DNA from: Scyliorhinus canicula
Taxonomy: Eukaryota
Assembly: GCF_902713615.1 (NCBI RefSeq)
Contig: NC_052162.1
Span: 81,817,240-81,881,239, forward strand
Direction of reading: 5' to 3'
DNA length: 64,000 bases
The notes under the pieces are model-generated. The model did no database searches and was not told the origin of the DNA. It saw nothing but the letters and a program-made list of their open reading frames with translations. The first letter of the stretch is position 1. Each line of letters opens with the position of its first letter. This document shows, piece by piece, positions 17,085 to 47,220 of this stretch. Position numbers and translations under genes: made by a program.

Positions 17085-17600
17085 GCAGCGGAGTTCGCAG
17101 TCATCACCGAGATGCCACAGGTCCAGAGGGCGATCGACGGGGTGCATGTCACCTTATGAGCATCTGCTGATCACAGGCCAATCTTCACAAACTGAACGGG
17201 GTTCCACTCGTGCACGTTCAGCTGGTGTGTGACCATCAGCTGCGCATCATGCACGTCTGCCCCTGATATCCTGGAAGTGTGCAGGACACCTTCATCCTGG
17301 TACATTCGACGATTTTAGGCCTCTTCGCGGTACCCGCTCTCCCCAACCGCTGGGGGGTTGGCTCCTGGGCGACAGGGATTATCCACTGTGGTCGCAGCTG
17401 ATGACACCTATCCGAAGGCCTCACACCTCAGATCGATGCAGAGATCCCACCAATGCCGTGACCAGGGGTGTGATCGAGCAGTGTATCGACATCCTGAAGT
17501 TGAGGTGCCTGGACTGCTCTGGAGGGGCCTTCCTGTATAGCGCTACAGAGTCTCCCACATCGTGGTGGTCTGCTGCGTCATCCACAAAATTGCCCATTCA
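17085..17600 (+). pseudogene. Harbinger DDE transposase (HARBI1-like) fragment
   Basis: MPQVQRAIDGVHV, VQLVCDHQLRIMHVC..YPGSVQDTFIL, GWLLGDRDYPLWSQLMTP, TRGVIEQCIDILKLRCLD. Stops and frameshifts present. Confidence 0.9.
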
Positions 17601-17912
17601 GGCCAGGTCACCCGAGATGATGGCTGCCAAAGGGGAGCCAGGTCACAGGCTGGGAATCACTGTGGTCGCCTCCACTTCCCTGGCCTTACGGGCATCAGGA
17701 GTGGAGGGAACCTGCTGTGATTCCCGACTGGTGACCTGGGTTCCTTGTAGTGGTCTTCCGGGGCGATCGGACCTGAATGGGCCCAGCTGCAGCTCGTGTG
17801 TCCCAGGTGACCCTCTGCCCATGTGATGCTCCAGGGACAGGAGGGGGAGTGCCAGAGGTGCTGCGGCGTTCTGGCACCTCCCCTGCAGGAGTCACCAGCA
17901 AGGGCCCCATCA

Positions 17913-18260
17913 GGGTAGCACGGTAGCATTGTGGATAGCATAATTGCTTCACAGCTCCAGGGTCCCAGGTTCGATTCCGGCTTGGGTCACTGTCTGTGCG
18001 GTGTCAGCACATTCTCCCCGTGTGTGCGTGGGTTTCCTCCGGGTGCTCCGGTTTCCTCCCACAGTCCAAAGATGTGCAGGTTAGGTGGATTGACCATGAT
18101 AAATTGCCCTTAGTGTCCAAAATTGCCCTTAGTGTTAGGTGGGGTTACTGGGTTATGGGGATAGAGTGGAGGTGATGACCTTGGGTAGGGTGCTCTTTCC
18201 AAGAGCTGGTGCAGACTCGATGGGCCGAATGGCCTCCTTCTGCACTGTAAATTCTATGTA
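17913..18260 (+). mobile_element. HE1-type V-SINE nested in Harbinger 1
   Basis: Full head, V-domain and tail; internal duplication at 18101-18136. Confidence 0.95.
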
Positions 18261-20070
18261 AAACTCTCCCTCCCTCAGGGTGCCCGATGGCCCCCGGGCT
18301 ACTCTATGGGATGGGGGTATGAGCAGACCTAACTCTTGAGGCTCCTCTGCCACCTGCTGTTGCCAATCCTGGAGGCCCGCTCTCATCTCGACTAGGATCT
18401 GCATGCTCGCAGCCATGGAGCACAGGGAGTGAACAACCTTCCTCTGGGACTGCGCCACATCATGCTGTGATTGTGCCACCGTCTTCTGTGACTGGGCCTC
18501 CTCCCTCTGGATCTGTGCCACATCAGCCAGCAATGCCACTTACGCTCTCAGCCATGGCCCGCTGTGACTGCGCCACGCTCTGGAGCGCCGCTCCGATGTC
18601 CAGGTGACTGTGGTACATGGCTGCCAGTGATAGGGCAGCTTTGTCCTGGGCCTCGGCCAGCAGCTGCACAGGGTGCCCCAGGCATTGGACATCTTGACCA
18701 ATGGCTGAAACCTTAGTTCCCAAGACCTCCACAACGGACGCCAACCCTGCATTGTTGGCTCAGGGTGGCATGTATGGTCGGCACCACCTTCTGCTCCTGC
18801 ACATGGTTGGACTCCTCCAACTGCACCTGCAGGTGCTGAATGCTCACCGACAACCCCTCATGCAGTCCCTGGCTTTCCACAATCGATGGGACCGTCCGTT
18901 CTCGAAGCCTGAAGGCAGCTAGTCCCTGGGGTTGGCCCGCCCTCTGACCGTCCGCCGGCTCAGGGGTTCCTAACTCCACCTTTTGGACCATAATACGTGT
19001 ATGGTGCGCACCAGATAGTGCCCCAGGAGCCTCTTCCATAAAATGCGCAACCGAGGTGAGTGTATCTGGGATGGTAGAGGGTGTTGGAGACAGCTGTGAC
19101 GGGTAGTCGGTGTCTTCCCCGGACTTGAGCTCCGGGGTGTCACGGCTTGCTTGTCGAGGGCTCCCATCCATGTCCGTATCTCGCCATCGCCAGTAGACAC
19201 TTGGGGTACTGGTTGTGGATGGGGTCAGAGGCGGGGACACCAGAAGGGACCAGTCCATCACCAGCAGCTCCTGAAGAACACAAGACAAGCCGCATGATTG
19301 CATCGCGGGCCGGGGGTAGTGTGGTGGAAGCAGTATGTGGGGGGAAGGATGTGTGTAGGGAGGGGGTGCTGGAAAGCGCATAGTGGGGTGGTGGTAGGTG
19401 TAGGGGGGGTTGACGAGGGGATGATACACAGGCCTTGGGGGACCTCAGCTCAGTGGGGTCTCACTTTCTCGCCCGATGCCTTCCTCTGTCCGGACCGCTG
19501 GCCTTTCTTCATGCCCACCAACCAGTGCTCTCTGTTCCGCGGGGGTGAGGGGTGGCAGGTCCGGCAGTCCGTCCCCTCAGTCTTCTTCTCTCGGCGATTG
19601 TGTAGGGCCCTTCCCTGGAGGGGAGAAACACAACACGCAGTGTTAGACAGTCCTACGCATGCAGCATAGGGGTGGGTAGCTGGTGGCTTCAGTGGCAAGG
19701 GCACCCGGCCATGGCGGCCGATATGGGTGCTGGCATGTGGTGCAGGGTGGAGGTTCAGCCAACCTCTGGATGTGGGGGGGGGGGGGGAGTGGTTATGGGT
19801 GTATGGGACGGAGTTAGTGTTAGAGGCACAGGATTGCCTATTCACCCTGAGGAGATCGTGCAGTTTTCTTTGGCGCTGGTGGCCAGTGCTTGCGGTGTTG
19901 TCCACGGCGCTGACGACCTCTGCCAGCTCCATCCAGGCCAGGCAAACGGTGGCAGTGGACAGCCTCCTTCCCATCCCGAGGTACAGGGTGGCCTGCCTCT
20001 CCTCCACGGTGTCCAGCAGGGTCTCCAGTTCAGTAACAGTGAACCGGGATGCCACTTGTCTTGCTATCCT
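18261..20070 (-). pseudogene. Harbinger Myb/SANT-like protein with heptad-repeat C-terminus
   Basis: ASRFTVTELETLLDTVEERQATLY...AWMELAEVVSAV...QRQRKLHDLLR (Myb-like); C-terminal VAQIQREEAQSQKTVAQSQHDVAQSQRKVV. Confidence 0.85.
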
Positions 20071-20839
20071 TGTTGGCTGGGATGGTTTTTGAGGGGAGTG
20101 GAGTGCCCACATGCGGCTGTAGCTTGCCAGCCTCCCGAGTGCCGATCCCGAATCTGGCGAATCAGCCACCGTTTTTCATTGGAATCGGTCTTGTTCCATG
20201 TGACGGCGGTGCTAGCCCCTTAGCGCTCGGTGAATTGTTCCTGGTGCGGCGCCAATTTTGCTGTCGTAGAAGTCCACGAATCCTGCTGCGGCGTTAATAC
20301 TTAGTCTCGGGAACGAAGAAGCTGGCCCGGCCCTTGTTAGTCCTGCAAACTGATATCAGAGATGGTAATCATTCCACTGAGAGAAGTTTAAATTACAAAA
20401 ACACACAGCAAAATGTTGTTGATTTCAGCTTGCCCGGGACAACATCTCATTTGCAAGTGGACATAGTCTGAAGAATAAAAAGCTGTGCTTATCATAGACA
20501 GGGTGCCCTGGTGCGTTACACAAATGCTGTTCTCATTAACATCAGTTCAGAAGCATAAATAGCAGCAATCGTAGTCTTGGCAACAATCCCAGATGCTGCA
20601 GTGTTTGTAGCTGAGTTAGAATCGCTGGAATGGCGCACTGGCATGTCATAACACACAGAATCTTCTACTTTTAATGTGAGTATGTTTCTCCCACCCAGCA
20701 AGGATTGGTAGAAACTGTTTAACCGTACAAGAGTCAAGTCATGACTAAAAGGCTAAAGGAATTGTTAGACCATATCTTATTCGCCATCTCAGTTAACAGG
20801 TTGTCCCTGTTGGGGAATCTTGATGGTGCAGAAGATCGG

Positions 20840-21287
20840 GGGCGGGATTCTCCGCTGCCCTATGCCAATATCGTAATGAGCGATCGGGCGGAGAATCTAT
20901 TCCGACGCCCAAATCGGGGGCGGCGCAGGTTTGATGCCAGTTTTCGAGTCTCCACCCCCTCTGAAATGGCATCATCACCCGCTGCACGCCGTTGCAACGG
21001 CGTTGGTGCCTCATCAGCAGGCCCTCCCGCGATGCTCCACCCCAATCGGCCGCGATCCCTACCGCGGGGGTCCTGTGGAGTCACTAATGGCAGATCCACG
21101 CACGGCCGGTGCCATGTTGTGCGGCACTACGGCTGCAGTTCGTCGCCATGTGCATGCGCGGACAGGGACCTGGCCATTCTCACCGGTCCCGGAATCGGTG
21201 AAGGTTCAGCACCGATTCTGTCGTCGTAAAACGCCCCCAAATTCTCCATTTCAGCTGGCACAGCCGCTGATGCGGAGAATCCAGACC
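20840..21287. mobile_element. Harbinger-type MITE
   Basis: TIRs GGGCGGGATTCTCC / GGAGAATCCAGACC, TSD CGG/CAG. Same family as 28846-29477 in the opposite orientation. Confidence 0.85.
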
Positions 21288-24557: not shown

Positions 24558-27398
24558 ATGCGCAAAGGAGGCGCCGCATGAGGCCTCGCGTGTGCCGGCA
24601 GCACCTGCCATTCGAGGATTTGCTGGACTGGGTACGCCATTGAAGACTCCGGCTGAGCCAGGGGACAGTGCGAACATATCTGTCAGATCACCGCAGGGGA
24701 ATGGGAGAGGACGCCCACTCACGGTGGCCGTTATGGTGATGGTCGCCTTGAGCTTCTATGCCACGGGGTCCTTACGCCGAGTGGGGACCTGTCCTGGATC
24801 TCACAGAGCTCAGTGCACAGGTGCATCAATGCCATCATGGAGGCCCTGTATGCCCAGTCGACACAATACATCCACTTCAATACAAGTATGGTCCATGGGA
24901 TGATGACAACCCACTCCGCGATGAGCTCTGGTGCTCCGTATCCTTTGTCAGTGTCTGACTCCCGCCCAGGAGAGCACTTTCCACTATCCACCCGGGTGAT
25001 CCCTGCATGCGAGCTGGCCATGCGGTCACAGGGTGCCATCGGATCCCTGGGGTGGCGGAGGTGGTGGTGGTGAGGGGTGGGGGGTGGGGAAGGGGGTTGG
25101 GGGTGGAGACACCCGGAGTGGTTAGCGCTGGCTGAAGTGTGGTCCCTCAGCCATGCCCACCTCCAATATCTGCCCATTTCCCCTCACTGCCCCTGCACCC
25201 ACTCTGCGGCCAGCTCAGACCAGACGAGCCCACCCTACACTCCCTTCTGTCAGAGCATCGAGGCAGGTTGTAACATTGTGCACAGGTGTTTAATGTGAAA
25301 ACATATGTACAGATTTGTGCCCTAGCCCCTATCGCTAAACTGTGCCCTGTCCCCGTGCAAACTTAACTAGTATCTAGTTTTGTGGCCTTACGGGCCCGAA
25401 CGCCACGCTTAGGCGTATCCCACACGGTATATCGGGGTGGAGGCGGCCTGCTGTGATTCACACCCTGTCACCTGGGTCCCCTTTGGCGGCCATTTTCTGG
25501 GGCAACCAGGCCTGGCTGGGCACAGCTGCTGCTGGGCATCCCGGGTGGTGTGGTGCCACCCTGTTCTGCCCGCTGCCCATGTGATGCGGCAGGGACAGGA
25601 GATGGGGAGTCCAAGGTACTGCGCTGTTCCAGCACCTCCCCTGCGAGAGTCACCGGCACAGGGCCCATCACCTCATCCTACCTTGGGTTGCCTGATGGCC
25701 ACTGGGCTACTCAATGGGATGGGAGTGCCCGTCCTGAAGGCCACTGCTGCCTCGGCCAGGGTCTGCATACTGGTGGCCAAGGAGCACAGATAGTAGACCA
25801 CCTCCGTCTGGGACTGCGCCACATCACGCTGTGGCTATGCCACCTCTACCTGCGTCTGTGCGACGTTGGCCAGTGCCTGGGTAATTCCGCCGATGCTCTC
25901 AGCCATGGCCAGCTGTGACTGGATCATGCTGTGAGAGGGCAGCCGTGTACTGGGCCTCGCCCACTGCCTGCACAAAGTTCCCCAGGCCGAAACTCTCGCA
26001 CTCAAGGCGTCCACCCTTACGGTGTTGACCTGGGTGGCACACACGGCCGGCACCACCTCCTGCATGCAATTTGACTCCTTCAACTGCTCCAGGAGGTGTT
26101 GGACGCTTGCCAAAAATCCCTCATATAGTCCATGGCTCTGTGACTGCATATTCACAATCGATGGGACCATCCGTTCCAGAGCCTGAAATCCCTCTGGACG
26201 CTAGCTAGCCCCTGGGGTCGACCTCCCCTCCAACCGTCCGCCTTCTCGGGAGTTCCTCCCTGCACCTGCTGTACCGGGGCATGTGTGTGGCGCGCAGGGA
26301 GCGTCTTCACTAAAGTGCCCAACCGAGGTGAGTGTATCTGGGTTGGTGGAGGGTGTTGGAGACAGCTGTGATGGGAAATCAGTGTCATCCTCGGACTCAA
26401 GCTCCAGGGTGTCCTGGGATTTGGGTGGATGGCTCTCTCCGTGTCGGTGTCGTCCTCATTGCTGGTCAGCATCTGGTGGGTGCGAGGGTGGTGTCGAGGT
26501 GCTGATGGGTCTGAGAATGGTATGGGGGTGTTGTTGGGGGAGGTGACACACATGTCACCGCAACTTAGCGGGTCTCGCTTTCTCGTCTGAAGCGATCTCC
26601 ACGTCGGGACTGCCCTTTCCTCGGGCTCGCCGACCACGTTCAGGGCCCTTTGCTCCACTACAATGAGGGGCCTCAGGTCTGACAGTCCCTCTCCAGTCTT
26701 TCCCTGCTGCCTGTGGTTATGGGCAGCCTTCTCCTGAGGGTGAAAGTGGTGGGGGATGGGGAGGACATACACACAGAAAGTGCAGTGTGAGACCATCCGA
26801 CGCATGCAGGCCAGCGGGTGGGTAGCTGGAAAGGCACCTGGTCGCGACGTGGGTGCCAGCATATGGTGTAGGTTGGGAATTCGGCTGCTCTCTGGGTGAG
26901 GGGGAGGAGTGGGATTGCGGATGTGTGGGGAGAGGGTTGGTGTCAGGGGCACGGTGCTGCCTACTCACCCTGGCTGTCCTGAGGAGGTTGTGTAGTTTCT
27001 TTCAGCACTGCTGGCTGGTCTGGTCAATATTGCTCACAGCGCTGACCACCTCTGCCACCTGCGTCCAGGCACGATGAACAGTGGTGGCTGGCAGTCTCCT
27101 CCATGGCTCTAGCAGGTTCTTGAGGTCGGCGTCCGTGAAACAGGGTGCCCCTTTCCTCGCTGCCATCTTGTTGGCTTGGATGGTGAGTGCGGGAGTGAAG
27201 TGTGTATATGCAGCTGGAGCTTATCAGCCTCCTGCATGCCAATCGCGAATCTGCAAAATCCCGCACCGTTTACCATTGGAATCGATTGTGTTCCACGTGG
27301 CTCCGGTGCTAGCCCCTTAACGGTTATTGAATTGGTCCAGGTGCGGCACCAGTTTTGCTGTCATAGAAGTCCACGAATCCTTCCCCAGCACAAACAAT

Positions 27399-27568: not shown

Positions 27569-27855
27569 AATTAGTCTCAGGAATGGAGAATTCTGCTGCG
27601 GGGTCCTGGAGAAGAGATGTTTTTAACTATTAGACTGTCAGATCTAAGTCGAACGTCAGTAAAAATCCAGATTAATACCTTTTGACACTAGTTTGACAAA
27701 TTTGCTAATTAAATAATCCTAATATAGTGCATTGATGAATCTGTAACTAACTTTAATGAAATATTGAAATCCCTTGCTCAATATTTTAATTTCAATTTGT
27801 GGAGCACGTTAAAAAGCAGCACAGAAAGCCCCCAGCATCTTCTGGAGGCCATATT

Positions 27856-28288
27856 TGGGGTGTCGGATCAGCTGGGGTTGGCGCTCCGCCGGCCTTTGGC
27901 GCCACGCCAGCCGGGGCCGAAGGGACTTCGTCGGCCGGCGTAAGTCTGCGCATGCGCCGGTGAGTCAGCGGCTGCTGACGTCATCCCGGCGCATGTGCAG
28001 GGGAGGGGGTCACTTCCGCATCCGCCATGGTGAAGACCATGGCGAAGGCGGAAGGAAAAGAGTGCCCCCACGGCACAGGCACTCCCCGAGGCCAGATCGC
28101 CCCCCACAGGATCCCGGAGCCTGCCCACGCCGCCTGCTCCCGCAAGTTAGGTAGGTGGTGTGATTCCCGCCAGCGGGAGAGGCTCGACAGCGGTGGGACT
28201 TTGGCCCATCTCGGGCCGGAGAATCGCTGGGGGGGGGGGGGGGGGGGGGGGGTGGGGCGGCCCGGCGGGGGGTCGGAGAATCCCACCC
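27856..28288. mobile_element. Harbinger-type MITE (left TIR missing)
   Basis: Right TIR GGAGAATCCCACCC, CpG-rich body. Confidence 0.7.
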
Positions 28289-28559
28289 ATTGTATTTGTT
28301 GCCATTGTTGATGTTGTTTGCTGGTGGGTGTAAATTTGGATGAAAGTGTGAAAAAGGAGGAGAATAAAAATATTTATAAAAAAAAAGAAAGCCCCCAGCA
28401 AAGCATTGAAAGGGAAAAAAAAACAATACTTAAATAAACATGAGGGCAGCAGAGACGCAGGGAACTTTCTGGAAATCTCAAATATATATACTTTTGGAAA
28501 TGCTGACACATTACCTGAATTGCAACAGCAGGCGACTGGGCAGAGCAACTAGCTAGCTA

Positions 28560-30310
28560 TGAATGAAGGAAAACAATCAAATAAAACCTAAATAAACAAA
28601 ACCTGCAAAAGGAAAATGAAATAGGATTGGATAACGTTCATATCAGATTTGAATAAAAGATTTAATACTCAAGGTTCAAGCTGAATATATACCTTGAAGA
28701 TGCATGATGCACTAATGTCGACAATAAAACAAACTTTTCACGATCAGAACAAACATAATTTTGAAGTGTCACAGAGGTACGAGAAAGAGACGACAGAGTT
28801 GAAGAAAATGGTTGGACATTTGGAAGAAAACTTAGAAAAAACATTAGGCTGGATTCTTTGTTTCAGTGGCCAAGTGCCAGCTCAAATGAAGAATTTGCGG
28901 GCGTTTTACAATGCCAAAATCGGCACCGAATCCTCACCGATTCCAGGACCAGTGAGGGGCTAACTCCTCGCGCTCCCGGCTTCCGCACTGAAAATGGCTG
29001 GAGAAATGCCGGGTCCCTGGCCGTGCATGCGAATGCCGATGACCTACAGCCTTACAACATGGACCCGACTCGCCATCCGTGGCTCCACAGGCAATTCCCT
29101 TGCCATCCCCTGGCCAGCCCCCACCAGTCCCCCCAGCCCTCGTAGAAGCCAACACGGCCAGCAGCATGGATCCTGGTCAAGTGTGGTGGAACTGGACACA
29201 GTTCGCAGCCGCCACACCAGATTCCCGACCGCCAAGGCCAAAAATCAACCGCAGACAGGAACTCAGCCTATCAGGGGGTGGAGCATCCCAAGAAAGATTG
29301 CCGATGACGCGCTAACGACGTTGCAACGGCATGGGGCGCATGACACGATTACACCACTTCCGAGGGGGGCGGAGCATGGCAGACGGGCATCAAACTGGCG
29401 CCGGCGATTTGGGTGTCGGAGTGGATTCTCCGCCCGATCGCCAATTATGATATCGGCGATAATGGAGAATCCCGCCCATTGCATTTCCAAGCAGCTGTAT
29501 TAAGAGATGCAATTACGAACCTGGAATGGCAAGAGAAAGTAGACATTGTCACAAAAAAGCGTGAGGAGTCTCAAAAACAATTAGCAGAAGCATAATTACA
29601 GAACGTAAGCTTGAACAATAGCACAGAGGAATTACACCTTGTCAAGGAGAAAGTGATCGGTGTTGAGAATGCACTTTTCCGTATGAAGGATGCATTTGAT
29701 AAGGAAAAATTAGAACTAATGAGAACATTGGAATGCCATTAACAGGAAGTAGAACACTTGACAGAGGGCCTGAAACACAACTGATGAACTTGCAGTACAA
29801 ATTCAAGAACATTGGATCTTCAATTAAAACTTGATGTAAGCATCACGCAAGATGCTGGGAACAGGAGAAGGAATTGTTATTTAATTAGAACAGTTGCTTG
29901 AAAGCAGAATTAACAAGCAAAATTGATGAAATTCTTGAAAGACGCTCCGATCTGAACAACATGAAGGATGTGATGTGCATACGGAGGAGCAAATCCATAC
30001 TTTAAAAGCAGAAAAGGTGAATTCTACAGAACAGATTAAAGGTCTAATGAACAGTCAGTAACCATGGAAGTGAGATTCCAAAGAGAAATGAAGTTGTTAA
30101 ATGTATACAAGAGTCCCACAGTAAGGCTGAAGCAGAAACAACTCAAATTACCATAGTCGTTGCTGAGCTGGATGAAAAATTCAGCTCAAAAAAGATGCAA
30201 GTCATTAAATATTTAGCTAAAATTCTGAAATAAGTGGGAATGAAGGTTTTATTGTTGAAATATGAACTTTCATATGCATCGTAACAAGCTGCAGGATAAA
30301 CGAAGAAAGA
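28560..30310 (+). pseudogene. Intronless decayed coiled-coil ORF, CCDC158-like, split by a MITE
   Basis: Removing MITE 28846-29477 plus one ATT joins ...HLEENLEKT to LHFQAAVLRDAITNLEWQEK... in frame. Helical E/K/L-rich frames continue to about 30300 with stops and frameshifts. Family assignment is from memory only. Confidence 0.6.
28846..29477. mobile_element. Harbinger-type MITE
   Basis: TIRs AGGCTGGATTCTTT / GGAGAATCCCGCCC, ATT TSD. Confidence 0.9.
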
Positions 30311-30334
30311 GGGAAAAACACTATGGGGATGAGT

Positions 30335-31038
30335 GGGCGCGATTCTCCCAAACAGGGAGAAATCGTAAGGCTGGCGTCAAAAACGGGCGAGTTTGACGCC
30401 AGCCTCCCCCTCCCCGACCGGGAACCGATTCTGGTCCCCGGTCGGGGCTAGCATGCCGCGGCCGTGAACTCCGGCATCGCGGGCTTCACGAATTTCGTTA
30501 AGCCCGCTTGCCAGAGTTTGCGACGGCTGACGCGTCACATGACGTCAGCCTTGCATGCGCGGATGACGTCATCGCGCATTTGCGCGAAACCCGCGCATGC
30601 GCAGGCCGGGATGCCCCTCAGCCGCCCCACGAATTGATACAGCGGGGCGGCGGAAGGACAAAGAGTGCGCAGGAATCGGACCCGCTGCCCGCGATCGGTG
30701 CCCACCGATCGAGGGCCCATGGCACCTTTGGCACGGCCGTGGTACTGCCGTGCCAATCGGTGCCATGGTTGCCAAGATCCGAACTTTACGGCCGATTTTA
30801 CAAACGGCCAGACCAGGTGTGTTTGCCGTTCGTAAAAACGGCCGTAAAGGGCTTGGACTTCGGCCCATCGGCTAGCTGAGAATCGCTGCTCGCCGTAAAA
30901 AAACGGCGGCAGCGATTCGTGTCGGGAGTCGGACGTGGGGGAGGGGAGAATAGCGGGAGGGCGTCAGACTAGCGTGGCCGTAAAAATTTACGACCCCCGC
31001 TATTCTCCGCACCGTCGTGAGTGCGGAGAATTTCGCCC
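30335..31038. mobile_element. Young CpG-rich Harbinger-type MITE
   Basis: TIRs GGGCGCGATTCTCC / GGAGAATTTCGCCC, AGT TSD. Confidence 0.92.
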
Positions 31039-31120
31039 AGTGTTTGTGTCCCCTGGAAAAAAATTGATAAATATACAACCACCTATCACTACAACATCCG
31101 AATCAACAAAGTGGATTCTT

Positions 31121-31320
31121 GGGCGGGGAATCCACTCCGACACCCAAATCGGGGCCGGCGCCGGTTTGATGCCGTTCAGCCATGCTCCGCCACCCCCCCC
31201 CCCCCCTCGGAAGTGGTGTAATCATGTCATGCGTCCCATGCCATTGCAACGGCATTGGCACGTCATCGGCAATCTCTCTTGGGATGCTCCACCCCCGAGA
31301 GGCAGAGTTCCTGTCTGCGG
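31121..31320. mobile_element. MITE fragment (20840 family)
   Basis: CCGACACCCAAATCGGGG...GGTTTGATGCC matches 20900-21040. Confidence 0.7.
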
Positions 31321-31321
31321 T

Positions 31322-31720
31322 TGATGTTGGACTAGGTCAAGTCCAAGGAATGGAGAAAGATTCCGAGGTGCCAGACAACCTCGGCTTCAACAGAGTTTAT
31401 CTGAAGCGACAGATAATTGCGATCAAGATATGGAACAGTATAAGACCTACAAACCACCCGTAACTATGAACTCAGAGACTTGAAAGGGGGTAGCAATAAT
31501 GAGGTGCATTAGAATAACTTGAAATACATTGGTAAGTATTTGGGGTAGGCATAGCAAAAGGGTCTGGCACAAATAAGATTACCATGGGATAGTACCACCC
31601 AAACAGTGAAATTTAGAGAACACATGACTGACACCTAGGGGTCAGAGCCGTGTGCACAAGCAAATATGGAGACAGCTCCGAGCTTGAATGATTATTTAAT
31701 TAATACAGTTAACTTACTTA
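31322..31720 (-). mobile_element. Possible LTR fragment
   Basis: Minus strand ends ...CCAACATCA after an AGATAAA signal. No TSD. Confidence 0.3.
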
Positions 31721-31928: not shown

Positions 31929-32498
31929 TAAGAAGACTTCATTAAGGCATGCCGGATGATATCCAACTCGGAACTCTACCTCTGTGCAACCCACAAAAAA
32001 TGTACCTTGTGGAATCAGTAAGAAGGGTAATGTCAAGAAACATTATAATTCACCTGGGGGGGGACACACCTTGACAAATTGTTATGTTGTTAAGTTCCCT
32101 TTTCTTTGAAAGGCAAACAAATGTATTGTTTAGCACCACTTCCACATCTTGCCCATTAGTGTGTTCAGAGTGTAAACCTACTTGTTACATAATGAATATT
32201 GTAATGAACTCCAATTGGCTTTATTGGTTGGCCAATTGGAGTATGAGCTCCCTCAATGATAGCTCATTGAGGGGACCCATATAATCACCTGTGTAGGCTT
32301 TGTGAGTCAGTCTTAGGTTGACTGGACTGCTAGCAGCACTGTTTGTAGCTGCTACTGTAATATCGTTATTGTTAATAAATATTGGTGTGGTGACGGAACT
32401 CCTGCCTCCCGTGGATTACTACAGTGGCGACGAGGTAAACTACGAATTTTGCGGAGACCAGCTGCCGCACTCGGAGGGTAAGCCTTGCCATTTTAAAA

Positions 32499-33300
32499 AT
32501 GCCGATTTTTGGGAGGTTAGAGGCATTCGACCCGGCTATTGAGGACTGGTCCCAGTATGTGGAGAGAATGTGTTACTTCTTCTGGGCAAATGATATACTG
32601 ACAGATGAAAGGAGACGGCTTATCCTGCTGTCAGCGTGTAGACCCTGCGCTTTCGCCATTATACGTAGTCTGACTTATCCCAATGCGCCGGACACGAAAA
32701 CTTTCCAAGAAGTAACGGAATTGGTGAAAGAGCACTACGACCCAAAACCACCCCTCATTTTGCGTAGGTACAGATTCTACACAGTGAAGCGGGAAGACAG
32801 GGAGTCAGTCACGAATTTCTTGACCCGCCTGAGAAGGCTAGCGGAAAAATGTGAGTTCGGCCCGACGCTAAATGAAATGCTTCGGGACCGGTTAGTGTGT
32901 GGTATAAACGACCTCACAATACACAATTCCGCCTGTTGGCGGAAACGGAGCTAGACTGCAGGCAGGCGTTACAGCTCGCACTGTCCCTAGAAAAGGCAGC
33001 AAGTGGGGCACAGGAACTACAGGGCATGCCAATGGAGGTAGATACCTGTAAGAGGGACTACCACAATGGGTCCTGCTACCAGATAGCCGCTCTCAGGAAA
33101 AACCTGAGGAATGGAGGGAAAAAGGAAAACCCCAGAACTGCCCCCAAGTCTGCCAGGACTAACTGGAGACAGAGGGAAGTACCGGCTGAGGTTCCTCCAA
33201 CAGAGAAGGAGTGTTTCTGGCACCAGACAGAGTGGGGTAACAATGACAGAAACCCTAGAAGGAGGTGGCAAAAGAGGAATAGCAGGTGGGACGCAGGGAA
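32499..33300 (+). pseudogene. gag: gag, frameshifted near 32920
   Basis: FDPAIEDWSQYVERMCYFF...RYRFYTVKREDRESVTNFLTRLRRLAEKCEFG...MLRDRLVCGIND, continuing as RLLAETELD in another frame. Confidence 0.9.
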
Positions 33301-36250
33301 GTACACAACCTAGACGCCCCATCCTCCTCCGAAGAGGAACAATTATATAATATTACAACGAAGAAAGCAGAACCCATTAGGATTACCCCAAGGGTGAACG
33401 GACGGCCAACAATAATGGAAATAGACACGGGTGCGGCCGTATCAGTAATGGGAGTGGCAGCATTTAGAAAAATCAAAGATGGACTCCAGCCACTAACCCT
33501 AACAAAAACATCGACGAAACTTAAAACCTACACAGGGGAACCCCTGGAAGTTCTAGGCACGACTCATGTACCTGTGGAATATGAGAAACAATTGCTCAGA
33601 TTACCGTTGATGATGGTAGAGGGCTCCGGGCCGAGCTTAATTAGACGGAACTGGCTGAAAGACCTAAAATTAGATTGGACAAAAGTTTTCCAGAGTGGAA
33701 GCGGGCAGTTGAGTGGAGTACTCCAAAAATACCCGGGGGTCTTCCAGGAAGGTTTTGTGGAAATCATAAGCGCCAAAGCAACTTTGCACGTGGACCCAGA
33801 AGCCCTTCCGAAATTTTGTAAGACCAGGCCGGTACCTTTTGCATTAAGGAAGAAAGTAGATGACGAAATAGAAAGGTTACGGCACGACGGCATTATCAGA
33901 CCAGTACAATTCTCGGAATGGGCAGCGTTGGTGGTACCAATTTTGAAGCCAGACAGCTCGATACGTCTCTGTGGAGATTTCAAACAGACAGTAAACAAAT
34001 ACGCACTGCTGGACAAATACCCAATCCCGAAAATAGATGACCTATATGCCAAATTGGCAGGTGGGCTTTTATTCACGAAACTAGACATGAGCCACGCCTA
34101 CCTGCAGTTAAAACTGGACAAGGGCTCCCAGAAGTTCGCAACGATCAACACCCTGAAGGGCCTTTTTCGTTATACTAGGCTACCTTTTGGAGTGTCATCA
34201 GCCTGCGCTATATTCCAGCGTACAATGGAAAATATTCTGCAGGGACTACCGCACGTGGCGATTTATTTGGACGATGCCTTAATCACGGGTAGGACAAACA
34301 GGGAACACCGAGCATTTGGGGACATTAAGGAACAGCTGTCATCCGAAAATGTCCTAGAGCATTATGACCCAAGGAAGGAGTTGGTGGTCACTTGTGACGC
34401 ATCCCCCTATGGGGTAGGAGCTGTCTTAGCCCATAGAGGAAGGAATGGGGAAGAACGGCCAATAGCCTATGCTTCGAGGACCTTGGCGATGGCTGAGAGG
34501 AAGTACGCCCAAATCGAGAAGGAAGGACTGGCGGTGATATTCGCAGTAAAAAGATTTCACCAGTATCTGTACGAGCGGAAATTCACCATAGTGACGGACC
34601 ATAAGCCGTTATTAGGGTTATTAAAAGAAGACAAGTCAATACCCCCAATTGCATCAGCTAAAATCCAACGCTGGGCGTTGCTACTGGCGGCATATAGATA
34701 CGTTCTGGAGCACAGACCGGGAACGTGAGTAGCACATGCAGATGCTTTGAGCAGACTTCCCCTCCCGGACACTCCGCCGCAAATACCAAAAGTAGAGGAG
34801 ACAGTAATGACTCTAAATGTTTTGGACACCCTACCAGTGGACGCACAACATATTCGGTTGTGGACTCAAAAAGACCCAGTTTTAGCCAAGATGAAGCATT
34901 TATTGCTAACAGGGGAACTGGAAAGACCAGTGGAGCCCCAGATCACCCATGCTGGAGCAGAAGGGACCAAATAACCATAGAAGACGGTATCCTATTATGG
35001 GGAGCCCGGTTAATCGTCCCAGCTCAGGGCCGTCAAGCAATCTTAACTGAGTTACATCACGGACACCCAGGGGTATCTAAAATGAAGATGCTAGTTCAAA
35101 GCTACATTTGGTGGCCAGGTTTGGACACAGACATAGCAGCCTTGGTATGTCGGTGCCAGGAGTGCCAACAGGGGCAAAGAGTGCCACCAGCGGCACCATT
35201 GCACCCGTGGGAATGGCCAGGCAGACCGTGGACCCGCCTGCATATTGACCACGCCGGCCCTTTCATGGGCTCAATGTTTTTGGTGATAGTGGACGCCCAC
35301 TCCAAATGGTTGGACGTCCACCGGGTAAACACGGCAAGCACAGCATCGACAATTGAAACACTCAGGGCCTCGTTTGCAACACATGGACTGCCGGAGGTAT
35401 TGGTGTCGGACAACGGAACGGGATTCACAAGTGGGGAATTTGGAAAATTCCTGAAGGAAAATGGAGTCCGTCACATCAAAACGGCCACTTACCATCCAGC
35501 GACCAACGCTCTGGCAGAGAGAGCGGTCCAGACACTTAAAGCGGGACTCAAGAAGCAGCCGGCAGCGTCAATAGATGCAAAGCTCTCCTGCTGGCTGTTT
35601 GATTACAGGACCACACCGCATTCCACAACGGGCATACCGCCAGCTGAACTCTTAATGGGAAGGTGGCCGCGAACGAGGCTGTCTCCTTTTCCAAAATTTA
35701 ACGGGGAAAGTGGAGAAACAGCAGGAGGCCCAATGCAGGGGGCATGATAATAGTTGGCAGCAGAGACATTTCCAGGTGGGGGCACCGGTTTGGGTCAAGA
35801 ATTATGGGAATGGACCAACGTGGGTCAAAGGCACGGTAGAGTCCCAAACAGGGCCCATATCCTATGAGGTTTCAATTGGAGGTAAGGTACTGAAGAAACA
35901 CCTAGACCAAATAAGGGCAGCGGAACCACACCTGGAGGCAGGCGAAGCAGGACCGCCTCAAGGTGGGATAGCCCAGACGGAAAGGATACCCACACCCCAA
36001 CCCCGAGCAATTTCTCCAGACCCCGTCATCCAGTCATCAGAGTCAGAGATGGACACACTCGACGAGGCCGCAGCAACACCTCTCCCCGAGGAGGAGGACG
36101 AACAACTTCCAAGGAGGTCGTTAAGGTACATCCCGCCCACTTCGGAGAACGACCCGGCGGACGACACAGAGGTGACAGACCCAGACATGAGGAGCAGGAA
36201 GAAGCTCAGAGGAATGCCAACTGGCAGGAATTCCTCGGACTTTGGGGGGG
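33286..36250 (+). pseudogene. pol: pol (PR-RT-RNase H-IN), disabled
   Basis: PR EIDTGA; RT LPFG and YLDD; RNase H CDAS, EKEGLA, TDHKPL; IN HHGHPG...CQECQ, HIDHAGP, VSDNG, AERAVQT. Stop at 34726, frameshifts, internal RT deletion. Confidence 0.95.
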
Positions 36251-36527
36251 AGGGGTGTAATGAACTCCAATTGGCTTTATTGTTTGGCCAATTGGAGTAT
36301 GAGCTCCCTCAATGAGCTATCATTGAGGGGCCCATATGATCACCTGTGTAGGCTTTGTGAGTCAGTCTTAAGTTGACTGGACTGCTAGCAGGACTGTTTG
36401 TAGCTGCTCCTGTAATATCGTTATTGTTAATAAATATTGGTGTGGTGACGGAACTCCTGCCTCCTGTGGATTACTACAAATATCAATCCATGACAGGGCA
36501 GATATGCAATGGGTAAATGGATGGCTG

Positions 36528-44973: not shown

Positions 44974-47220
44974 TGATGCATTATCAATTACGACGAGATG
45001 AGAGTAGAGTGTAATTGAGGCTTTATTACGCAGAGATGTGTAGCCTCCCGCAGCTGCTGCCAAAATGGCTGCTGTTCGGAGAGCCCACACATTTATACTC
45101 AGCCTACTGGGCGGAACCAGCAGGCAGGGATCTACCCCCATACCTGTATGACAGGGGTCTTACCGTAATACACCTCATATGCCGTACATACAGTACAACA
45201 GTGGTGACTACCACGTTCACCTCCTGTTAAAAAAGAGTCCGGCGGGGGTGGTGGAATGCTATCTACATGTCGCCGTTTAACATTTTAGGAACAGTTCCTA
45301 AATTCAGATGATTGGGCGCCTTGATCCGTCGTTGCGAGCGCCGCTGTCTCAGTGATGATTCAGGCATCGGCTCGGTCGTCGGTGATACCGAGAGCGTGTC
45401 GACCTCATCCTCATCCACGGGTGGGACCAAGGGCAGAACGGATCGTCCTGGAGGGGGGGCTGTGGTGGGGTGCGCTGGGGGAAGGGAGGGTGGGGCAGAC
45501 GGGGGGGGGGGGGGGTGTATGTGGGGACCCAGCTGGTGCCAGATCCCTAAGGGAGACAGTGTCTTGGCGGCCGTCGGGGTACGCTACGTAGGCATACTGC
45601 GGGTTTGCGTGAAGAAGCTGTATCCTCTCAACCAACGGGTCCGCCTTGTGAAGCCACACGTGCTTGCGGAGGAGAACGGGTCCTGGAGCTGCCAGCCACG
45701 TTGGGAGCGAAACCCCGGAAGTGGACTTCCTGGGGAAGGCAAAGAGACGTTCATGGGGAGTTTTTTTAGTTGCCGTGCAAAGGAGCGATCGAATGGAGTG
45801 AAGGGCATCAGGGAGGACCTCCTGCCAGCGGGAGGCCAGGAGATTTCTGGACCGTAGGGCCAGCTGGACGGCCTTCCAGACCGTCCCATTCTCCCTCTCC
45901 ACCTGCCCATTTCCCCGGGGGTTGTAGCTGGTCGTTCTGCTCGAGGCAATGCTCCTGCTGAGCAGGTACTGGCGCAGTTCATCGCTCATGAATGAGGATC
46001 CCCGGTCACTGTGGACGTAGGCGGGGAAACCGAACAGAGTAAAGATGGTGTTGAGGGCTTTGATGATGGTGGCAGACGTCATATCGGGGCATGGGACAGC
46101 AAAGGGGAATCTGTAATATTCGTCGACCACGTTAAAAAAGTACGTGTTTTGATTGGTAGAGGGTTGGAGACCCTTTGAAATCCATGCTGAGGCGTTCAAA
46201 GGGGCGGGAGGCCTTCACCAGGTGCGCTTGGTCTGGCCGGTAGAAGTGTGGTTTGCACTCCGTGCAGACCTGGCAGTCTCTGGTGATAGCCCTGACTTCC
46301 TCGATGGAGTTGGGCAGGTTACGGGCCTTTATGGAGTGATAAAAACGGGTGACACCTGGGTGACAGAGATCGTCATGCAGGGTCCGGAGTCGGTCCACAT
46401 GTACCTCGGGATAGGGAATCGGGGGTTCGTTGAGCTTACCGGGGCAATGCAAAATCTCGTAATTATAGGTGGAGAGCTCGATCCTCCACCTCAAGATCTC
46501 ATCATTTTTTATCTTCCCCCGCTGTGTGTTGTTGAAAATGAAGGGAACCGACCGTTGGTCAGTGAGGAGCGTGAACCTCCTGCCGGCCAGGTAATGCCTC
46601 CAATGTCGCACAGCTTCTACAATGGCTTGGGCCTCCTTCTCGACGGAGGAGTGCCAAATTTCGGAGGCGTGGGAGAAGAATGCCACATGTCTGCCTGCCT
46701 GGTTGAGGGTGGAAGCCAGAGCGACGTCTGATGCATCGCTCTCGATTTCAAAGGGGAGCATCTCGTCGACCACGTGCATCGCGGCCTTGGCGATCTTGGC
46801 CTTCATATGGTCGAAGGCCTGGTAGCCTCGGCCGTCAGTGGGAAAACGGTGGAGTGGATGATTGGGCCTTGGGTCCGCATAGTTAGGGACCTACTGGGCG
46901 TAGTACGAGAAGAACCCCAGGATTCGTTTGAGGGCCTTGGGGCAGTGGGGGAGTGGGAGTTCCATGAGGGGGCGCATGCAGTCGGGATCGGGCCCTCGGA
47001 CTCCGTTTTGAATCACATAGCCGAGGATGGCTAATCGGTTTGTGCTGAACACGCACTTCTCCTTGTTGTACGTTAGGTTGAGGAGTTTGGCGGTGTGGAG
47101 GAATTTGGAAAGGATAGCATCGTGGTCCTGCTGATCATGGCCGCAGATGGTGACGTTATCCAGGTATGGGAAAGTGGCCCGCAGTCCGTACCGGTCAACC
47201 ATTCGGTCCATCTCCCGTTG
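44974..47220 (-). mobile_element. 5'-truncated Gypsy element: RT-RNase H-IN remnant plus 3' LTR
   Basis: LTR 44974-45215, PPT at 45216-45225; RT FPYLDNVTICG, RNase H ESDASD and TDQRSV, IN VHSDRGSSF and GNGQVERENG. Frameshifted. Confidence 0.92.

What the first reader, a model, noticed from the sequence alone, without database searches (positions are those of the whole stretch)
28560..30310. Intronless, shortened CCDC158-like coiled-coil pseudogene revealed by excising a MITE
Seen: deleting 28846-29477 plus one ATT copy gives an in-frame join: KHNFEVSQRYEKETTELKKMVGHLEENLEKTLHFQAAVLRDAITNLEWQEKVDIVTKKREESQKQLAEA*LQNVSLNNSTEELHLVKEKVIGVENALFRMKDAFDKEKLELMRTLECH*QEVEHLTE. After frameshifts follow RCWEQEKELLF...LKAELTSKIDEI, EQIHTLKAEK and KRNEVVKCIQESHSKAEAETTQITIVVAELDEK. 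From memory, these blocks line up in order with human CCDC158 segments (KEHFERVLEEY...HEK; YLKGRIFPVEDQL; HEVEITGLTE; RLWDRD...LRRELD; HFLKEEK; VALDK), with long stretches skipped. CCDC158 is multi-exon, so this would be a retrocopy or a captured gene that diverged strongly at protein level before dying. That hints at an undescribed compact paralog family, possibly with live copies elsewhere (inference). It is the only host-like coding sequence I recognise in the window.
Basis: partly seen in the sequence, partly recalled or inferred. Interest (0 to 1): 0.72.

Follow-up and report, generated by a model that had tools for sequence, protein, structure and literature searches.

The report
Decayed TPR-like coiled-coil copy, not CCDC158
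This is a dead, intron-free, transposon-interrupted copy of a coiled-coil coding sequence in a probable catshark genome. It looks like the front end of the nuclear-pore basket protein TPR rather than CCDC158, belongs to a family of dozens of copies, and is an ordinary kind of genomic fossil.

Summary
Removing the 632-bp TIR-flanked insert (28846-29477) plus one ATT joins two open stretches in frame. Relatives in sequencing runs have the uninterrupted junction.

The CCDC158 assignment found no support. Six pieces gave no Pfam CCDC158 hit at E<=10. A 1.84-billion-protein phmmer search with the first piece gave one spurious repeat protein. The Atlas gave only generic coiled coils.

The best lead is nucleoprotein TPR:
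- The top PDB hit of piece 29596-29739 is human TPR chain residues 90-131 (E 0.39, weak alone).
This is colinear with the first block.

The sequence is not single-copy. Dozens of contigs at 80% likeness or more exist in a sister species and up to 19 in the same species. One RNA run holds a transcribed relative.

This copy has 8 stops and at least 3 frameshifts. It has no LTR pair around it and no obvious poly(A) tail or flanking duplication of its own.

Two unchecked first-reader notes on other DNA of this genome also describe intronless or captured TPR coiled-coil copies.

Verdict: ordinary pseudogene-like fossil, renamed.

The parts
28640..28774 (+). Possible most N-terminal part of the copy (...DLNKRFNTQGSS*IYTLKMHDAL...KHNFEVSQ), with one stop. 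Few other copies reach the 80% likeness cut-off upstream of about 28765-28776.
   Evidence: Translation. Depth falls from about 230-750 to about 30 upstream of 28737 in run X6. Its resemblance to TPR residues about 14-55 is from memory only.
28775..28845 (+). Block A, RYEKETTELKKMVGHLEENLEKTL. It is the best-kept segment in the family and the only part matched by RNA reads from a relative.
   Evidence: run X14 reads fit 28776-28840 with 7 differences. Between 27 and 36 contigs of run X6 share variant letters here.
28846..29480 (.). MITE-like non-autonomous DNA transposon (28846-29477) plus the second copy of a 3-4-bp target duplication (ATT/CATT, 29477/8-29480).
   Evidence: TIRs. Motif enrichment. 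Related copies. Summed depth reaches thousands in both species, and relatives have empty sites.
29481..29595 (+). Block B, HFQAAVLRDAITNLEWQEKVDIVTKKREESQKQLAEA, ending in stop TAA 29593-29595. It joins block A in frame once the insert is removed.
29596..29742 (+). Block C, 48 codons then stop TAA 29740-29742. It aligns with human TPR chain residues 90-131. A single-sequence model predicts one confident helix.
   Evidence: PDB phmmer top hit 5to5_A, E 0.39. The printed 42-mer searched back on the window gives its best hit at 29608-29733, E 4e-5 (circular, see report). Helix at pLDDT 92.
29743..29835 (+). Blocks D and D2: QEVEHLTEGLKHN, two stops (TGA TGA, 29782-29787), then TCSTNSRTLDLQLKLD.
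   Evidence: Translation. Resemblance to TPR QELEYLTEDVKRLN...LQLKLD with nearly the same spacing is from memory only. Four contigs of run X6 carry one extra base after 29797.
29835..29981 (+). Block E in the next frame: CKHHARCWEQEKELLFN*NSCLKAELTSKIDEIL..., with stop TAG 29886-29888. This segment has the highest copy number of the non-MITE parts.
   Evidence: 52 contigs of run X6 share a variant at 29917.
29978..30061 (+). Block F in the next frame, HTEEQIHTLKAEKVNSTEQIKGLMNSQ, then a stop. The shift fits a 1-nt loss in this copy.
   Evidence: One extra base after 29979 in 5 contigs of run X6 and 1 of run X1.
30063..30233 (+). Block G, a 56-codon open stretch ending in a stop at 30231-30233. 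Copy number is low here, and the likeness to TPR (...DEKF...IK...) is weak.
   Evidence: Depth is 16-32 in run X6, about 2-3 copies. No informative Pfam, PDB or Atlas match.

Best explanation
The stretch 28640-30233 is a dead copy of about 1.0 kb of protein-coding sequence, with no intron-sized gaps. It derives from the N-terminal coiled coil of the nuclear-basket protein TPR, roughly residues 15/90 to 300. That part dimerises TPR and is the part borrowed by oncogenic kinase fusions.

Proposed history:
1. The copy arose from spliced mRNA.
2. It multiplied to tens of copies in the catshark lineage, most likely as a passenger of a retroelement.
3. It decayed neutrally at this locus, gaining 8 stops, at least 3 frameshifts and a deletion of about 25 nt.
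4. It was then split by a MITE insertion.

This copy does nothing today. It is not related to CCDC158 beyond being a coiled coil.

Shown: the translations, the secondary MITE insertion, the multi-copy state in two species, a transcribed relative, and the absence of any CCDC158 signal.

Inferred: TPR as the parent (partly from a remembered sequence), origin from spliced mRNA, and a retroelement as the vehicle.
For: - Frames and in-frame join.
- MITE anatomy, and relatives without the insert.
- No CCDC158 signal: Pfam on 6 pieces at E<=10; phmmer of the first piece against 1.84 billion representatives; Atlas neighbours are TACC, HOOK, CCDC171, GOLGA2 and similar.
- TPR, first block: the best PDB hit of block C is human TPR chain residues 90-131.
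- TPR, second block: a fragment lying 85 residues further along TPR hits 29835-29936 at E 6e-6. The next best hit in the window is 0.3. It lies 227 nt downstream, so it is colinear.
- Reliability of my memory: my recollection of TPR 91-132 matched the PDB print-out in all but one residue.
- Multi-copy state: 13-52 contigs of run X6 and up to 19 of run X1 share variant letters across the non-MITE parts. Contigs about 93% alike in the sister species look orthologous.
- One-base insertions in other copies after 29797 and 29979 are of the size and direction that fit two of the frame changes.
- TPR's N-terminal coiled coil as a dimerisation motif: PMC12751062.
Against: - The only fully tool-based TPR match has E 0.39.
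- Blocks A and B gave no TPR hit in the PDB.
- A 29-residue query reading through the stop between C and D (X at the stop) gave nothing.
- The locus has about 28 more residues than human TPR between block A and block C.
- ORF statistics alone are marginal.
- No obvious poly(A) tail or target duplication of the copy itself was seen by eye, and no LTR pair was found. The mode of copying is therefore not shown here.
- No protein relative could be fetched.
Confidence: 0.68

Rival explanations
1. One reading: a retrocopy or captured copy of CCDC158 that diverged strongly and then died.
For: The sequence is coiled-coil-like and has no intron-sized gaps.
Against: No Pfam CCDC158 (PF15921) hit for any of six pieces at E<=10. 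CCDC158 is absent from the Atlas neighbours. No hit in 1.84 billion representatives for the first piece. Two blocks match TPR colinearly instead.
Confidence: 0.03
2. A retroelement's own coiled-coil ORF (Gag-like or ORF1-like), not derived from a host gene. Its copies are ordinary transposon fragments, and the TPR likeness is convergent heptad composition.
For: Tens of copies in two species, with copy number varying along the stretch. The sense strand is A-rich at 42% A. The neighbourhood is TE-rich. A weak Arc_MA hit for the first piece, E 0.038.
Against: No Pfam hit to L1 ORF1 or Gag families. No LTRs or RT nearby belong to it: the Ty3/gypsy element 32200-36478 has its own LTRs and lies outside. 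The exact strings LQLKLD and EQEKELL, with TPR-like spacing, are hard to get by composition alone.
Confidence: 0.12
3. Not a gene remnant at all: purine-rich, A-rich repetitive DNA whose translations look like K/E-rich coiled coil by composition.
For: The longest open run is only p 0.07 and the run with at most 2 stops p 0.02 against shuffles. All three frames give K/E/R-rich text. The region is a repeat.
Against: Two colinear protein-level matches to one protein. The minus strand shows no such excess. Family indels fall where the frame changes. Block C folds as one confident helix, although single helices are easily predicted.
Confidence: 0.1
4. Same parent (TPR), but the copies arose as ordinary LINE-mediated processed pseudogenes or by segmental duplication, not as cargo of an LTR-type element.
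For: No LTR pair around this copy. A separate retroposed insert lies 300 bp upstream at 27837-28385, with AATAAA, a poly(A) run and a 15-bp target duplication, so LINE machinery was active here.
Against: No obvious poly(A) tail or target duplication at the ends of this copy. Tens of copies of one 5' gene fragment that resemble each other more than they appear to resemble TPR suggest one capture followed by amplification. Unchecked notes from the same genome report a TPR coiled coil inside an LTR-like element.
Confidence: 0.3

Closest known systems
Nucleoprotein TPR (vertebrate nuclear-basket protein; yeast Mlp1/2 family), N-terminal coiled coil
   Same: Block C aligns to human TPR chain residues 90-131. 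Block E aligns to about residues 176-209 at 48% identity (memory fragment). The blocks have the same order, nearly the same spacing and helical character.
   Different: Only about the first 300 of roughly 2,360 residues are present. The copy has 8 stops, at least 3 frameshifts, a deletion of about 25 nt, and about 28 extra residues before block C. It is multi-copy, and the remaining TPR domains are absent.
Processed pseudogenes and retroelement-transduced gene fragments (for example, LTR elements carrying captured host mRNA pieces)
   Same: Coding sequence with no intron-sized gaps, disabling mutations, amplification to many copies, and later TE insertions.
   Different: No poly(A) tail, target duplication or LTRs could be assigned to this copy, so the vehicle is not shown in this window.
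CCDC158 (Pfam PF15921)
   Same: Long alpha-helical coiled coil rich in E, K, L and Q.
   Different: No detectable sequence relationship in any search.
MITEs (non-autonomous TIR DNA transposons)
   Same: The insert is 632 bp with 11-12-nt TIRs, a short target duplication, a very high copy number and no evident coding capacity.
   Different: The superfamily is not assigned. The duplication (ATT or CATT) is not the TWA of PIF/Harbinger.

Membership tests
CCDC158 (Pfam PF15921) | Significant match to the family profile | tested here: not met
   hmmscan of six stop-free pieces at E<=10 listed no CCDC158. Pieces are short (28-54 aa), and a joined query could not be given by reference.
CCDC158 (Pfam PF15921) | CCDC158 among the nearest proteins in large databases | tested here: not met
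   phmmer against 1.84 billion representatives gave one unrelated repeat protein. Atlas neighbours of block C were other coiled-coil families.
Nucleoprotein TPR / Mlp | Significant sequence similarity to the TPR N-terminal coiled coil | tested here: inconclusive
   Top PDB hit but E 0.39. The memory-typed 34-mer gave E 6e-6 on the window. No tool-given TPR sequence beyond residue 142 was available.
Nucleoprotein TPR / Mlp | Colinear order and spacing of several blocks | tested here: met
   Block C at TPR about 91-132 and block E at about 176-209 lie 227 nt apart, against 255 nt expected. The second block rests on a remembered sequence.
Nucleoprotein TPR / Mlp | Rest of the protein (TPR_MLP1_2 domain, acidic C-terminus) | tested here: not met
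   No such Pfam hit. The likeness ends near 30233. This is a fragment, not a TPR gene.
Processed pseudogene / retrocopy | Parental introns absent | not testable with these tools
   The blocks are contiguous, but the catshark TPR gene model could not be fetched. That TPR has about 51 exons is from memory.
Processed pseudogene / retrocopy | 3' poly(A) tail and flanking target-site duplication | tested here: not met
   None seen by eye at 30233-30332 or beyond the next insert.
LTR-retrotransposon cargo | LTR pair enclosing the fragment | tested here: not met
   The only LTR pair (32200-32423 / 36256-36478) encloses a separate Ty3/gypsy pol. There is no similarity between the reconstructed flanks.
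L1-type ORF1 / Gag | Match to Transposase_22 or Gag profiles | tested here: not met
   No such hit.
MITE | TIRs, target duplication, many copies, empty sites | tested here: met

The most novel reading that the evidence does not exclude
Catsharks carry a lineage-specific, amplified family built from the dimerising N-terminal coiled coil of TPR. It is spread by a retroelement that uses it as a Gag-like multimerisation module or as working cargo, and at least one member is still transcribed with an open frame. This would be a host oligomerisation domain recruited by a transposon, or a new TPR-N gene family acting on the nuclear basket.
Probability: 0.12. Interest if true: 0.6.

Novelty: new member of a known kind. 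Interest (0 to 1): 0.3.

Why it matters
For this locus, very little: it is a dead fragment in a transposon-rich region.

The correction of the name matters for the scan, because a 'compact CCDC158 paralog family' should not be pursued.

The family-level observation is mildly interesting. The N-terminal dimerisation coil of TPR appears to have been copied from mRNA and amplified to dozens of copies in two catshark species, with a transcribed member. It would add to other cases noted in this genome of retroelements carrying pieces of host mRNA. It could also be used to date and trace such captures.

Tried and rejected
Searches that gave nothing useful:
- Pfam on six pieces gave only sub-threshold Tup_N, Arc_MA and similar.
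- PDB searches with pieces A and B gave nothing relevant.
- A 29-residue query reading through the stop between C and D, with X at the stop, gave nothing.
- phmmer of piece A against 1.84 billion representatives gave one repeat protein, P0001, judged spurious.
- Three homologous-protein searches found no candidates: block C, the A run using the region option, and the PDB-printed TPR 42-mer. The length filter excludes full-length TPR.
- The Atlas on block G gave nothing.
- AlphaFold of block C gave a single helix, and Foldseek against Swiss-Prot models found no match.
- Searching papers for TPR peptide strings found nothing. The 1994 Tpr paper text holds no sequence.
- There is no second copy in the window by blastn or tblastn.

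Ideas dropped:
- 28770-28774 (cacag) as a splice acceptor, with the locus as an intron-bearing duplicate. DNA copies also lose likeness near 28765-28776, and the RNA relative's upstream letters still translate to a similar F...E.E..Y pattern.
- The coiled coil as Gag of the downstream Ty3/gypsy element. That element's 5' LTR starts at 32200.

Full report
**What is in the sequence**

I divided them into blocks:

| Block | Coordinates | Peptide and break |
|---|---|---|
| A | 28775-28845 | RYEKETTELKKMVGHLEENLEKTL |
| B | 29481-29592 | HFQAAVL...QLAEA, then TAA |
| C | 29596-29739 | 48 codons, then TAA |
| D | 29743-29781 | QEVEHLTEGLKHN, then TGA TGA |
| D2 | 29788-29835 | ...LDLQLKLD |
| E | 29835-29981 | next frame; ...RCWEQEKELLFN*NSCLKAELTSKIDEIL... 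|
| F | 29978-30058 | next frame |
| G | 30063-30230 | another frame; stop at 30231-30233 |

Together these blocks hold 8 stop codons and at least 3 frame changes.

The base composition of the stretch without the insert is 42% A and 14% C. Against dinucleotide-preserving shuffles, the longest open run (91 codons) has p about 0.07. The longest run with at most two stops (160 codons) has p about 0.02. The minus strand shows nothing unusual. By openness alone, the case for a former gene is only marginal.

**The insert**

- 28846-29477 carries terminal inverted repeats GGCTGGATTCT / AGAATCCCGCC.
- The terminal motif occurs 22 times in the window against 3.9 expected.
- Related copies lie at 31121-31328 and 20840-21284.
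- CATT stands on both sides of the insert. Removing the insert and one ATT gives ...EKTLHFQAAV... in frame.
- Laying reads showed that this is the true pre-insertion state:
  - RNA reads of run X14 that fit 28776-28840 continue with CATTACATTTCCAAAG....
  - Contigs of the sister species jump from 28840 to 29517 and beyond, with short GCATTTCC-like or ACATTTCC-like bridges.
  - The insert itself has summed depths in the thousands.

I call it a MITE-like element. Its superfamily is not assigned.

**The CCDC158 reading**

- Six stop-free pieces were scanned against Pfam at E<=10. None listed CCDC158. The only rows were sub-threshold Tup_N, Arc_MA and similar.
- phmmer of piece 28694-28846 against 1.84 billion representatives returned one protein with SYEKESTWLKQWLGELE-type repeats, which I judge spurious.
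- The Atlas placed block C among generic vertebrate coiled coils: TACC, DUF3496, HOOK, CCDC171, GOLGA2, RABEP1 and intermediate filaments.

**What it resembles instead**

The best PDB match of block C is human nucleoprotein TPR, chain residues 90-131. Thirteen of 42 residues are identical in the HMMER alignment; BLAST counts 12. The E-value is 0.39, which is not significant alone.

A first-reader note on another piece of the same genome speaks of a captured TPR coiled coil. That made me take this hit seriously.

My recollection of human TPR agrees with the PDB print-out at all but one position of those 42 residues. I used it only as a lead. The blocks downstream appear to follow TPR in order:

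| Locus | Human TPR (from memory) |
|---|---|
| QEVEHLTEGLKHN | QELEYLTEDVKRLN |
| LQLKLD, 12 residues later | LQLKLD, 12-13 residues later |
| CKHHARCWEQEKELLFN*NSCLKAELTSKIDEIL | [34 protein letters not shown] |

I tested the last pair.
- 16 of 33 residues are identical.
- E is 6e-6, or 3.6e-5 with composition correction.
- The next best hit anywhere in the window has E 0.3.

This block lies 227 nt downstream of the start of the block C match, against 255 nt expected from TPR. The order is right. The locus is about 28 nt shorter, which also accounts for the frame change at 29835.

Searching the PDB-printed 42-mer back against the window gives 29608-29733 at E 4e-5. That is circular, because the 42-mer was picked by block C.

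Weak points:
- Blocks A and B gave no PDB hit.
- An X-bridged 29-mer across the stop between C and D gave none.
- The locus has about 28 more residues than human TPR ahead of block C.
- I could not fetch any TPR protein through the tools.

I put TPR as the parent at roughly three in four.

**The stretch is not single-copy**

Reads and contigs were laid at 80% likeness or more. Four runs were used, with coded names: X1 and X2 (same species, organism A), X6 (a related species, organism B) and X14 (RNA, organism A).

- Run X1 holds the exact locus: records 1, 5 and 8, with 0-1 differences and depth about 3-4.
- Run X6 holds contigs about 93% alike that look orthologous:
  - 28560-28829, with 19 differences and 1 gap;
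  - 29514-29718, with 15 differences;
  - 29698-30305.
- Many more contigs also fit, and they share variant letters against this copy.

| Position | X6 contigs sharing a variant |
|---|---|
| 28624 | 14 |
| 28781 | 27 |
| 28799 | 36 |
| 29762 | 18 |
| 29807 | 13 |
| 29917 | 52 |
| 29949 | 23 |
| 29998 | 27 |

- In run X1 the count reaches up to 19.
- Some contigs share only a sub-segment. For example, a 1,688-nt contig is alike only over 29858-30051.
- Copy number falls to about 2-3 around 30094-30211.
- Other copies carry one extra base after 29797 (4 contigs) and after 29979 (5 contigs in X6, 1 in X1). The change near 29979 is at the site. The first change could also lie at the 25-nt deletion near 29835.

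So this copy has lost bases that some relatives keep. This is independent support for a real reading frame in the family.

**Expression**

- No RNA run was listed as holding the stretch.
- In run X14, about 60 reads fit only 28776-28840. They show seven consistent differences, and their loose ends agree perfectly, so they come from one transcript of a relative and not from this locus.
- They are also open in one antisense frame.
- The relative has one A fewer in the A-run before CATT, so its frame across the junction differs from this copy's.
- Two of the seven differences are synonymous, which shows no clear sign of selection.

**How the copy got here**

I found no obvious poly(A) tail or target duplication at the ends of the copy.

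The only LTR pair nearby (32200-32423 and 36256-36478, 95% alike) encloses a separate Ty3/gypsy element. That element has protease, RT, RNase H and integrase. The reconstructed flanks of the locus show no similarity to each other.

Tens of copies of one 5' gene fragment resemble each other at 80-93%. Judged against human TPR only, they appear much further from the parent. This fits one capture followed by amplification better than many independent retrocopies.

Unchecked notes on this genome report Gypsy-type elements carrying host mRNA pieces, including a TPR coiled coil, and an 'intronless TPR retrocopy' elsewhere. I did not test these, so the vehicle remains an inference.

**Function**

This copy has no function. 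The N-terminal coiled coil of TPR is a dimerisation motif and is the part fused to MET in TPR-MET (PMC12751062). If the family was ever useful to a mobile element, multimerisation is the obvious guess. Nothing here shows it.

**Verdict**

- The name is wrong.
- The object is an ordinary decayed gene-fragment copy, interrupted by a MITE.
- The family behind it is a modest curiosity that can be settled by a whole-genome BLAST and an alignment to the real TPR.

Other agents' notes say the genome is the small-spotted catshark. I did not verify this.

Noticed in passing
window 27822-28400: A retroposed insert of about 550 bp (27837-28385). It ends in AATAAA plus a 9-nt A run and is flanked by a perfect 15-bp target duplication, AGAAAGCCCCCAGCA (27822-27836 and 28386-28400). 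It contains the 3' end of a MITE-like element and a run of about 30 G at 28220-28252.
   Followed up: partly
window 32200-36478: A compact Ty3/gypsy LTR retrotransposon on the + strand. Its LTRs are about 224 bp and 95% alike. Open pol pieces of 480, 340 and 201 aa carry protease, RT, RNase H, integrase zinc finger and integrase core. There are only about 850 bp between the 5' LTR and pol, so little room for Gag.
   Followed up: partly
window 17591-20284 and 25434-27381: Two copies, about 70% alike, of a roughly 2-kb element in the same orientation. The first carries a minus-strand ORF with a borderline Myb/SANT-like (Myb_DNA-bind_5) hit, as in Harbinger-associated Myb proteins.
   Followed up: partly
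window 30333-31040 and 31111-31330: Two further TIR-element insertions directly downstream of the locus. The second is 85% alike to the inner part of the MITE that splits the coiled-coil copy. Parts of this MITE family are present in poly(A) RNA reads of run X14.
   Followed up: no
window 45414-46199 (-): Another integrase-core (rve) ORF, pointing to a second retroelement remnant.
   Followed up: no
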